DNA of 63,806 nt, filler included, from Octopus bimaculoides (Eukaryota), in NCBI RefSeq assembly GCF_001194135.2. It is 5 parts of 5 records of this genome, joined end to end, with 100 filler letters (N's around TTAATTAATTAA, not from the genome) between each part and the next. Parts side by side here need not be neighbours in the genome. Positions count along the whole stretch, not along the records: positions 18,824 to 49,879 come from NC_069009.1; 4 more parts are not named here. One strand, given 5' to 3'. Below are positions 49,171-49,228 of this stretch, piece by piece. The position numbers were made by a program, and so were the translations under genes. The notes under the pieces are model-generated. The model was not told the origin of the DNA. It saw nothing but the letters and a program-made list of their open reading frames with translations, and made no database searches. Within the stretch, counting starts at the first letter, position 1. Each line of letters starts with the position of its first letter.

Positions 49171-49228
49171 ATTAAAATGAAATATGTGCTTATATTATAG
49201 ATTTAGAAATATATTGTCAATGAAATAC
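49171..49228 (-). promoter_or_regulatory. Inverted copy of the conserved post-exon intronic motif (candidate RNA docking site)
   Basis: The reverse complement GTATTTCATTGACAATATATTTCTAAATCTATAATATAAGCACATATTTCATTTTAAT matches 29669-29726 (after exon F) at 50/58, and its first 24 nt match 39310-39333 (after exon K) at 24/24. The homology is seen directly; the function is inferred. Confidence 0.5.

What the first reader, a model, noticed from the sequence alone, without database searches (positions are those of the whole stretch)
49171..49228. Candidate Dscam-like docking site: one antisense element after the LRR exon array is complementary to a motif downstream of most cassette exons
SEEN: a motif of the form (G/A)TATTTCATTGACAATATATTTCT(A/T)AATCT sits about 20-35 nt after the donor of 15 of 18 exons (A, B, C partly, D-I, K, L, M, Q, R, S) and is absent after N, O and P. 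I found one inverted copy, 411 nt downstream of the last exon S, embedded in otherwise sense-oriented intron module sequence. It matches the post-F intron at 50/58 and the post-K intron at 24/24 over its core. It resembles these distant class-2 introns (9-20 kb away) better than the neighbouring post-S intron, which argues against a simple local fold-back. KNOWN: competing base-pairing between one docking site and many selector sequences controls exon choice in arthropod Dscam1 (exons 4, 6, 9) and in chelicerate sDscam, and downstream docking sites exist. INFERENCE: pairing of any one selector with this dock would loop out all later cassettes and join the chosen exon to the next constant exon, giving LRR ectodomains of variable length and face. 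The duplex could also be an ADAR substrate, which matters given the extensive RNA editing in coleoid cephalopods. I know of no such RNA-structure-guided LRR cassette system in molluscs. A neutral inverted insertion remains a real alternative.
Basis: partly seen in the sequence, partly recalled or inferred. Interest (0 to 1): 0.85.

Follow-up and report, generated by a model that had tools for sequence, protein, structure and literature searches.

The report
Inverted intron motif in LRR array
An octopus gene built from 18 near-identical leucine-rich-repeat exons carries one backwards copy of a short intron motif that follows 15 of those exons; the copy is real and could pair with all of them in the RNA, but it looks like a late local insertion, not a proven Dscam-style splicing switch.

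Summary
Eighteen 72-nt phase-1 LRR exons lie at 23897-48760. Fifteen are followed, about 25 nt after the donor, by the motif TATTTCATTGACAATATATTTCT. One antisense copy sits at 49172-49228 and is the only inverted repeat in the 31-kb piece that is not low-complexity sequence.

For a docking site:
- The antisense core equals the consensus of the sense copies (26/26).
- Predicted duplexes are -25 to -55 kcal/mol, against -18 for shuffled controls.
- The sense motif is more conserved than its neighbouring intron.

Against it as the organiser of the array:
- The antisense copy groups inside one young exon subfamily (F/L/K/H), so it arose late.
- The sense motif is also conserved in two paralogous octopus genes with no antisense copy in the retrieved sequence.
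- A paralogous intron module in the same window lacks the antisense copy.
- Folding the post-S intron alone pairs it with the neighbouring post-S motif.
- Exon S is not the terminal LRR type, and the piece ends 651 nt later.

No orthologous locus or transcript could be reached. Best reading: a late inverted patch that forms a local intronic hairpin. Long-range competition is possible but unproven (about 0.2).

The parts
23897..48760 (+). Array of 18 LRR exons (72 nt, phase 1-1), in two classes. Class 1 reads '[21 protein letters not shown]' (B, C, D, F, H, K, L, N, P, R). Class 2 reads '[21 protein letters not shown]' (A, E, G, I, M, O, Q, S).
   Evidence: The LRRs are 36-48% identical to proteins of an Octopus LRR family, several members of which carry GPS/7TM adhesion-GPCR domains.
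23989..24049 (+). Sense motif after exon A (most diverged copy)
   Evidence: nhmmer E=4.6e-11; duplex with the antisense copy -25.6 kcal/mol
25149..25207 (+). Sense motif after exon B (core equals consensus, with a 2-nt insertion)
   Evidence: duplex -43.6
25376..25394 (+). Truncated sense motif after exon C
   Evidence: nhmmer E=0.048, profile positions 2-20 only
26809..26860 (+). Sense motif after exon D
   Evidence: duplex -45.2
28023..28086 (+). Sense motif after exon E
   Evidence: duplex -34.0
29666..29726 (+). Sense motif after exon F, the closest relative of the antisense copy (50/57)
   Evidence: duplex -55.0
30665..30726 (+). Sense motif after exon G
   Evidence: duplex -32.7
31685..31744 (+). 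Sense motif after exon H
   Evidence: duplex -51.4
33046..33103 (+). Sense motif after exon I
   Evidence: duplex -35.0
39306..39366 (+). Sense motif after exon K (first 24 nt identical to the reverse complement of the antisense copy)
   Evidence: duplex -47.7
40140..40199 (+). Sense motif after exon L
   Evidence: duplex -51.3
41062..41124 (+). Sense motif after exon M
   Evidence: duplex -34.7
43403..44789 (+). Exons N, O and P. Their post-donor introns lack the motif; (CTT)n or CT-rich sequence starts about 10-20 nt after the donor.
   Evidence: duplexes -5.5, -18.0, -5.5
46776..46837 (+). Sense motif after exon Q
   Evidence: duplex -30.2
48059..48118 (+). Sense motif after exon R
   Evidence: duplex -41.0
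48782..48836 (+). Sense motif after exon S: the local arm that pairs with the antisense copy when the post-S intron is folded alone (6 differences from consensus in 26 columns)
   Evidence: duplex -38.1
49172..49228 (-). Its 26-nt core is the exact complement of the sense consensus. Its 3' extension is diverged.
48851..49134 (+). Sense-oriented intron module to the left of the antisense copy. It is colinear with 35897-36116 in the I-K intron and includes a (TAC)n/(GAC)n repeat at 48913-49004.
49228..49277 (+). (CAT)n microsatellite that abuts the antisense copy and forms its right boundary. The paralogous module has a comparable TCA/CAT-type trinucleotide repeat (36198-36331).

Best explanation
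The antisense element is a late, short (about 57 nt) inverted copy of the post-donor intron element of the class-1 F/L/K/H exon subfamily. It was patched into the intron after exon S, most likely by template switching or repair synthesis next to a (CAT)n repeat.

The sense element is an older, constrained proximal intronic element that travels with LRR exons in this octopus gene family. It is probably a single-stranded splicing-regulator binding site, and its conservation does not depend on the antisense copy.

In the pre-mRNA the antisense copy must form dsRNA with some sense copy. The nearest partner, and the one predicted when the intron is folded alone, is the post-S copy, 336 nt upstream. 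This gives a local intronic hairpin of the kind that paralogous genes carry in each module. Any effect would therefore be mainly local: masking the post-S element, shortening the post-S intron, or acting as an ADAR substrate. Selection for it is unproven.

Shown: its existence, uniqueness, late phylogenetic position and pairing potential. Inferred: the origin mechanism, the local fold-back in vivo, and the weak or absent regulatory role.
For: - Late origin. Over 57 nt the copy is 0.82-0.88 identical to F, L, K and H but only 0.72-0.75 to B, D and R. That is within the spread of the F/L/K/H clade itself, 0.77-0.96.
- Absent from a paralogous module. The module at 35897-36201 shares both flanks with the post-S intron, yet the 85 nt that correspond to the antisense region show no similarity (748 of 2000 shuffles score as well; nhmmer E=90). 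The flanks are only 67-78% identical, so they are more diverged than the copy is from F (88%).
- The sense motif is constrained independently. Identity between the exon classes is 0.72 in the motif, against 0.48 and 0.33 in the adjoining intron and 0.60 in the exon.
- The same motif family follows LRR exons in paralogs L002 (O. sinensis) and L005 (O. bimaculoides). No antisense copy was found in either.
- Local fold-back. The MFE and centroid structures of 48761-49300 pair 48787-48805 with the antisense copy.
- A family precedent for local hairpins. In paralogs L001 and L004, modules of one exon class carry their own inverted partner 270-330 nt downstream. The match is 34 nt at 79-85% identity, and no shuffle of 1000 scores as well. 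The MFE contains 27-32 bp between the arms. The partner arm is the most conserved stretch of the module, 0.92-0.95 against 0.72-0.82 for the exon.
- No consensus local structure around the exon explains the sense motif (RNAalifold, 0 pairs).
Against: - The antisense core has 0 differences in 26 columns from the leave-one-out consensus of the sense copies. Sense copies have 0-6. The adjacent extension has about 7 differences in 32 from F/L/K/H (my hand count on the sequences). That pattern would fit constraint on the antisense copy too, but by my estimate it is not statistically significant and part of the extension divergence may lie on the F/L/K/H lineage.
- It is the only inverted fragment in 31 kb, and it falls on a motif that covers only about 3% of the locus.
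- Distal duplexes are thermodynamically stronger than the local one: -55 to -41 kcal/mol for class-1 copies against -38 for S.
- Nothing here measures splicing, so a long-range role is not excluded.
Confidence: 0.5

Rival explanations
1. Dscam-type competing pairing. The antisense copy is a docking site and the 15 sense copies are selectors. Pairing of one selector loops out all exons between it and the dock, so its donor is joined to the next exon. This would give LRR ectodomains of variable length.
For: - One antisense element against 15 sense elements, with selectors downstream of the exons and the dock downstream of S. From my knowledge of the literature, this is the arrangement proposed for Dscam1 exon clusters 4 and 9.
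- The dock core equals the selector consensus, 26/26.
- Duplexes are -25 to -55 kcal/mol, against -17.8 +/- 3.7 for shuffled docks.
- It is the only inverted repeat in the piece.
- All exons are phase 1-1, so any skip stays in frame.
- RefSeq isoforms of one paralogous gene differ by one 24-aa LRR unit in length and in which LRR units they contain.
- The duplication model of Ivanov and Pervouchine (PMC6071210) predicts this kind of pattern when an exon is duplicated together with one arm of a stem-loop.
Against: - The dock is younger than the array and nests in one subfamily.
- The motif is conserved in paralogs L002 and L005, where no dock was found.
- The paralogous module in the same gene lacks a dock.
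- The local S arm is the partner when the intron is folded alone.
- Substitutions in the selectors show no excess of changes that keep pairing: about 8 pairing-preserving against 5 pairing-breaking transitions, counted by hand on the output.
- S is not the terminal LRR type, and the next exon is outside the piece.
- There is no transcript or cross-species evidence.
Confidence: 0.2
2. A selected local hairpin. The post-S arm and the antisense copy form a functional intronic stem-loop, as in the per-module hairpins of paralogs L001 and L004. It would tune use of the S donor or recruit ADAR, with no role for the distant copies.
For: - The local helix appears in the MFE and centroid structures.
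- If the 92-nt (TAC/GAC)n repeat is discounted, the arm lies about +320 to +376 from the donor. In L001 and L004 the partner arm lies at about +308 to +398.
- In L001 and L004 the partner arm is the most conserved part of the module. One module (L001, exon 6206) carries a matching T-to-A change in both arms.
Against: - The post-S arm is among the most diverged copies, with 6 of 26 columns off consensus. It matches the antisense copy worse than the distant copies do, which is the opposite of co-evolving arms.
- No homology is detectable between the window's element and the L001/L004 arms.
- Fourteen other modules in the window have no partner arm.
Confidence: 0.15
3. The motif is a terminal inverted repeat of a small mobile element (MITE-like), or part of a dispersed repeat. 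The antisense copy would then be its second end or an independent insertion.
For: The post-S sense arm and the antisense copy bracket about 450 nt. Each is flanked by TA, which is trivial in AT-rich sequence.
Against: - In about 260 kb of five paralogous octopus loci, the window's motif profile gives only three hits (two significant in L002, one marginal in L005). All lie in introns downstream of LRR exons and none is antisense.
- Fourteen of the 15 sense copies have no second end.
- There are no matches in the metagenome or viral collections.
- A whole-genome count could not be made.
Confidence: 0.05
4. Assembly artefact: a chimeric join through the (CAT)n repeat in a gap-rich short-read assembly.
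For: The piece has N gaps of 10, 166 and 501 nt, one of them 246 nt downstream of the element. The element abuts a microsatellite. The gap style matches the O. bimaculoides assembly.
Against: - The element differs by at least 12% from every sense copy in the piece, so it was not pasted from any of them.
- Both flanks are contiguous sense-oriented sequence, within the same gap-free stretch as exons N-S.
- No sense copy has a (CAT)n/(ATG)n repeat next to the motif that could explain a chimeric join.
Confidence: 0.05

Closest known systems
Dscam1 docking site and selector sequences (arthropod exon clusters 4, 6 and 9; also 14-3-3 zeta, MRP1, srp)
   Same: A tandem array of homologous exons, each with an intronic element. 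A single complementary element matches the consensus of those elements. The selectors lie downstream of the exons and the dock downstream of them, which from my knowledge of the literature is the arrangement proposed for clusters 4 and 9. Predicted duplexes are long-range and stable.
   Different: Mutually exclusive use is not shown and is unlikely for LRR repeats. The selectors resemble each other over the whole 57 nt by recent descent. The 'dock' is younger than the array. No cross-species conservation or covariation is available. The adjacent constant exon is not in the piece.
Ivanov and Pervouchine 2018 model: competing structures arise when an exon is duplicated with one arm of an intronic stem-loop (PMC6071210)
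   Same: Exons and their proximal intron arm were duplicated many times, while only one complementary arm exists. A local stem-loop (S arm with the antisense copy) is predicted.
   Different: The single arm is not the old partner of the adjacent S arm. It derives from the F/L/K/H subfamily, so the order of events is reversed: first the array, then the inverted arm.
Per-module intronic inverted repeats in paralogous Octopus LRR genes
   Same: A post-donor segment (+40 to +73) pairs with an antisense arm about 270-330 nt downstream in the same intron. The spacing is similar to the window once the microsatellite is discounted.
   Different: In these paralogs the modules of one exon class mostly carry both arms (L004 has 4 antisense arms, L001 has 3). 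The sequences are not detectably homologous to the window's motif.
Conserved proximal intronic flanks of alternative cassette exons (intronic splicing enhancers or silencers), as known in vertebrates and flies
   Same: A stretch of about 30 nt within 60 nt of the donor is conserved well above the neighbouring intron, and across paralogous genes.
   Different: The binding factor is unknown. Alternative use of these particular exons has not been shown.
Intronic inverted repeats (for example Alu pairs) that drive exon skipping, back-splicing or ADAR editing
   Same: Complementary elements in two introns bracket a block of exons, and the near-perfect AU-rich duplex exceeds 50 bp.
   Different: The arms are copies of a gene-internal module, not a dispersed transposon. 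The selector lies at the 5' end of its intron, far from the acceptor that back-splicing would use.

Membership tests
Dscam-type docking/selector competing RNA structures | Tandem array of homologous exons that are used alternatively | tested here: inconclusive
   The homologous array is confirmed: 18 exons in two classes. Alternative use cannot be read from DNA. The only indirect support is that RefSeq isoforms of one paralog differ by 24-aa LRR units.
Dscam-type docking/selector competing RNA structures | Exactly one exon of the cluster is included per transcript (mutual exclusivity) | not testable with these tools
   No transcript data. All exons are 72 nt and phase 1-1, so the reading frame does not enforce exclusivity.
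Dscam-type docking/selector competing RNA structures | One selector element in the intron next to each variable exon | tested here: met
   Fifteen of 18 exons carry it 20-35 nt after the donor. N, O and P lack it.
Dscam-type docking/selector competing RNA structures | A single docking element complementary to the selector consensus | tested here: met
   One antisense hit, E=1.2e-9. Core 26/26 equal to the consensus. Duplexes -25 to -55 kcal/mol against -17.8 +/- 3.7 for shuffles.
Dscam-type docking/selector competing RNA structures | The docking element lies in the intron that adjoins the constant exon at the end of the cluster | tested here: inconclusive
   It lies 411 nt after S, but the piece ends 651 nt later. 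S is not the terminal '...GAFLFLPS...' LRR type that closes the arrays of all five paralogs, and no LRRCT exon is present.
Dscam-type docking/selector competing RNA structures | Dock and selectors are conserved between species, with the dock among the most conserved intronic elements and covariation present | not testable with these tools
   No ortholog exists in the protein collection and no eukaryotic DNA search is available. In paralogs L002 and L005 the motif is kept and no dock was found.
Dscam-type docking/selector competing RNA structures | The dock is at least as old as the exon cluster it serves | tested here: not met
   The antisense copy nests in the F/L/K/H subfamily (0.82-0.88 identity, against 0.72-0.75 to B, D and R). 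It is missing from the paralogous module at 35897-36201.
Stem-loop partial-duplication origin (Ivanov and Pervouchine 2018) | An ancestral local stem-loop of which only one arm lies inside the duplicated unit | tested here: inconclusive
   A local helix between the S arm and the antisense copy is predicted. However, the antisense arm is closer to distant class-1 arms than to the S arm.
Octopus LRR family containing adhesion-GPCR-like members (octopus-specific group 3 of Ritschard et al. 2019, PMC6408891) | GPS/GAIN and 7TM domains downstream of the LRR region | not testable with these tools
   Only internal LRR exons lie in the piece. The LRRs are 36-48% identical to Octopus proteins of this family, several of which carry PF01825 and PF00002. 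Shared repeats are 89-93% identical to Octopus loci.
MITE or dispersed repeat | Many copies away from LRR exons, with paired inverted ends and target-site duplications | tested here: not met
   In five paralogous loci (about 260 kb) the profile gives only three hits, all in introns downstream of LRR exons. The window has no second end in 14 of 15 modules. A whole-genome count was not possible.

The most novel reading that the evidence does not exclude
The antisense copy is a working docking site in an octopus-specific family of LRR genes that includes adhesion-GPCR-like members. Competition among 15 selectors for one dock would set how many LRR exons a transcript keeps. That would give graded ectodomain lengths by an RNA-structure mechanism so far documented for exon choice mainly in arthropods. 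It would also be a recently born example that catches the Ivanov-Pervouchine route in the act.
Probability: 0.15. Interest if true: 0.8.

Novelty: new member of a known kind. Interest (0 to 1): 0.4.

Why it matters
If the long-range pairing were used, it would be the first RNA-structure-guided exon selection in a mollusc and in an LRR receptor. It would also occur in a gene family that expanded specifically in octopuses and is expressed in the arm nerve cord, suckers and skin (PMC6408891). That would add a third route to cell-surface diversity, beside arthropod Dscam splicing and the expanded protocadherins.

Two results stand even if the antisense copy is neutral.
- LRR exons of this family carry a proximal intronic element of about 30 nt that is conserved across paralogous genes.
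- Some paralogs carry a conserved intronic hairpin in each module.

Both are testable handles on how these exon arrays are spliced.

Tried and rejected
- Orthologous locus. The concatenated 431-aa LRR translation found no protein above 44% identity, so no ortholog could be looked up. Look-ups of P0120, P0123, P0139 and P0128 and of a window ORF found nothing on record. The gene of P0129 is too long to fetch.
- Collection scans. Exact-pattern scans of metagenome and viral contigs for the motif gave 0 hits. These collections are not expected to hold octopus DNA.
- A decayed second dock. The paralogous module at 36117-36201 is not similar to the antisense region.
- Common origin with the paralog hairpins. 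The window's element and the L001/L004 hairpin arms show no detectable homology.
- A local structure around each exon. RNAalifold on 14 modules predicted 0 pairs.
- Known RNA families. Rfam gave no hit at gathering thresholds in the piece.
- A remnant of an inverted exon module. No inverted exon was found by tblastn, and the sequence beyond the (CAT)n repeat is ordinary CT-rich intron.
- Bias of selector substitutions towards G-U-compatible changes. About 8 against 5, which is no signal (hand count).
- Overall stability of the post-S intron. It is not unusual (z = +1.0); only the specific helix is notable.

Full report
WHAT IS THERE

The piece (18824-49879, 36.5% G+C, rich in trinucleotide repeats, with five N gaps) contains 18 exons of exactly 72 nt. 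All are phase 1-1 with AG/GT borders, and each encodes one 24-residue leucine-rich repeat. They fall into two classes that mostly alternate:
- Class 1 reads '[21 protein letters not shown]' with acceptor TGTTCCAG.
- Class 2 reads '[21 protein letters not shown]' with acceptor TTACAG.

No LRRNT or LRRCT exon is present.

The nearest proteins are Octopus LRR proteins at 36-48% identity. They belong to a family whose members carry a Cys-rich C-terminal module, and in several cases GPS and 7TM domains. This appears to be the octopus-specific adhesion-GPCR expansion described by Ritschard et al. (PMC6408891).

SINE-like repeats in the window are 89-93% identical to repeats in O. sinensis and O. vulgaris loci. 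The style of the N gaps matches the O. bimaculoides assembly. No protein above 44% identity exists in the collection, so this gene is apparently unannotated.

The motif follows 15 of 18 exons, 20-35 nt after the donor. It is missing after N, O and P, where CT-rich repeats start about 10-20 nt after the donor.

A profile of the sense copies finds one antisense copy, at 49175-49228 (E=1.2e-9). BLAST delimits the inverted homology to 49172-49228.

It is the only inverted repeat outside low-complexity sequence in 31 kb. It is flanked on both sides by sense-oriented intron sequence. It differs by at least 12% from every sense copy, which argues against a simple assembly chimera.

THE SENSE MOTIF IS CONSTRAINED

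Identity between the two exon classes, by region:

| Region | Identity |
|---|---|
| Motif (+25 to +54) | 0.72 |
| Exon | 0.60 |
| Intron +12 to +24 | 0.48 |
| Intron +55 to +84 | 0.33 |

The dip before the motif rules out a simple gradient of gene conversion spreading from the exon.

The same motif family (ATATTTCATT[G/C]AC.A.A.TTTCT) follows LRR exons of two other genes: L002 in O. sinensis and L005 in O. bimaculoides. Their LRRs are only about 45% identical to the window's. In L002 one copy has been pushed away from its exon by a SINE insertion with a target-site duplication.

RNAalifold finds no local structure around the exon that would explain the motif. It is most simply a single-stranded binding site for a splicing regulator. 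That is an inference.

THE CASE FOR A DOCK

- The antisense core matches the leave-one-out consensus of the sense copies in 26 of 26 columns. Sense copies differ at 0-6 columns.
- RNAduplex energies, in kcal/mol: F -55, H -51, L -51, K -48, D -45, B -44, R -41, S -38, class-2 copies -35 to -26, O -18, N and P -5.5. Shuffled docks give -17.8 +/- 3.7.
- Selectors lie downstream of the exons, and one complementary element lies downstream of them. From my own knowledge this is the geometry proposed for Dscam1 clusters 4 and 9. It is also the pattern the Ivanov-Pervouchine duplication model predicts (PMC6071210).
- RefSeq isoforms of one paralog differ by one 24-aa LRR unit in length and in which LRR units they contain. 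Cassette use is therefore plausible in this family.

THE CASE AGAINST IT AS THE ORGANISING ELEMENT

1. Over 57 nt the antisense copy is 0.82-0.88 identical to F, L, K and H and 0.72-0.75 to B, D and R. It nests within one young subfamily, so the array and its conserved motif predate it.
2. The post-S intron 48851-49134 is colinear with 35897-36116 in the I-K intron, and both stretches run into a TCA/CAT-type trinucleotide repeat. The 85 nt that correspond to the antisense region show no similarity. The copy therefore entered after that module was duplicated.
3. Paralogs L002 and L005 keep the motif, and no antisense copy was found in them.
4. Folding the post-S intron alone pairs the antisense copy with the post-S sense arm, in both the MFE and the centroid structure. 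Co-transcriptionally this nearest partner, with a 336-nt loop, should win over partners 1-25 kb away, although the distal duplexes are stronger.
5. Selector substitutions show no bias towards changes that keep pairing (hand count).
6. All five paralogous arrays end with a distinctive '...GAFLFLPS...' LRR exon that is absent here. The array very probably continues past the edge of the piece, so 'dock next to the constant exon' is unverified.

The contrast between the perfect core and the diverged extension (0 of 26 against about 7 of 32, the latter counted by hand) is suggestive. By my estimate it is not significant, and part of the extension divergence may belong to the F/L/K/H lineage.

A FAMILY PRECEDENT FOR LOCAL HAIRPINS

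In paralogs L001 (O. sinensis) and L004 (O. vulgaris) the post-donor sequence is different. There, modules of the 'NNIATIKEG' exon class carry an inverted partner 270-330 nt downstream in the same intron.
- The match is 34 nt at 79-85% identity, and no shuffle of 1000 scores as well.
- The duplex is -31 to -36 kcal/mol, and 27-32 of its base pairs appear in the intron's MFE.
- The partner arm is the most conserved stretch of the module: 0.92-0.95, against 0.72-0.82 for the exon.
- One module shows a matching T-to-A change in both arms.

In the window, once the 92-nt (TAC/GAC)n repeat is discounted, the antisense copy lies at about +320 to +376. That spacing is similar.

This raises the prior that intronic hairpins matter in this family. 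It points to a local role more than to a global dock.

VERDICT

The feature is real and unusual for its surroundings. The best-supported reading (0.5) is a late inverted patch, copied from a class-1 module, that creates a local intronic hairpin and whose selected function is unproven.

Other readings:
- Dscam-like competition among selectors: possible, 0.2.
- A selected local hairpin: 0.15.
- Transposon origin: 0.05.
- Assembly error: 0.05.

The decisive data are orthologous introns, junction-spanning reads and long-read cDNA. None of these is reachable with the present tools.

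Noticed in passing
L001 6584-6658, 8152-8226, 9973-10047; L004 8110-8184, 11498-11572, 17326-17400, 25207-25281: Paralogous Octopus LRR genes carry an intronic inverted repeat in individual modules. The post-donor segment pairs with an arm 270-330 nt downstream. That arm is the most conserved part of the module (0.92-0.95), and one module shows a compensatory double change. This is a candidate conserved intronic hairpin.
   Followed up: partly
L002 4137-4200, 4957-5020, 8030-8106, 1109-1164; L005 290-345, 10571-10630: The window's post-donor motif family (ATATTTCATT[G/C]AC.A.A.TTTCT) is also found after LRR exons of two other octopus genes, with no antisense partner found. 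It is therefore a family-wide conserved intronic element whose binding factor is unknown.
   Followed up: partly
window 36434-37710 (+): Intronless ORF fragments encode an SH2 domain and a Src-type tyrosine kinase domain. They carry frameshifts and an 18-nt tandem repeat (3.6 copies, AANILV repeated) at 37239-37303. This is probably a processed pseudogene of a Src-family kinase inside the 6.2-kb I-K intron.
   Followed up: no
window 33603-35083 (+), 42172-42772 (-), 21755-22606: Broken reverse-transcriptase and LINE ORF2 fragments (including a YVDD motif and a C-terminal zinc-knuckle region). One lies next to the 501-N gap.
   Followed up: no
window 49493-49879, 23130-23266, 18824-19029: SINE-like repeat with an (ATT)n tract, 89-93% identical to copies in O. 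vulgaris and O. sinensis loci. Two tandem 182-nt units end the piece. This supports an octopod origin for the window.
   Followed up: partly
L002 687-1164: A SINE inserted into the post-donor motif of the first LRR exon, duplicating ACTTCATTGATG. The motif is now split and lies about 420 nt from the donor. This is a natural 'mutant' that could show whether the motif matters for inclusion of that exon.
   Followed up: no
P0123 vs P0124 (O. sinensis RefSeq isoforms X3 and X6 of one gene): The isoforms differ by one 24-aa LRR unit in length and in which LRR units they contain. Alternative use of LRR cassette exons is therefore already annotated in this family.
   Followed up: partly
window 25127-25281: The intron between exons B and C is only 155 nt, against 550-6200 nt elsewhere. 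The motif after C is truncated after 19 nt, and exon C begins 'SLSSN' instead of 'YLSYN'.
   Followed up: no
L002 4175-4192 vs 4817-4834: An 18-nt stretch of the motif after exon 4065 is 17/18 complementary to a site 51-68 nt upstream of the next exon in the same intron (E=0.007). It could be an intron-bridging stem or a chance match in AT-rich sequence.
   Followed up: no
window 43403-44789: Exons N and P encode identical peptides. Both have lost the motif to (CTT)n expansion about 10-20 nt after the donor. O has lost it too, while its close relative Q keeps it. These are three intact exons without the conserved element.
   Followed up: no
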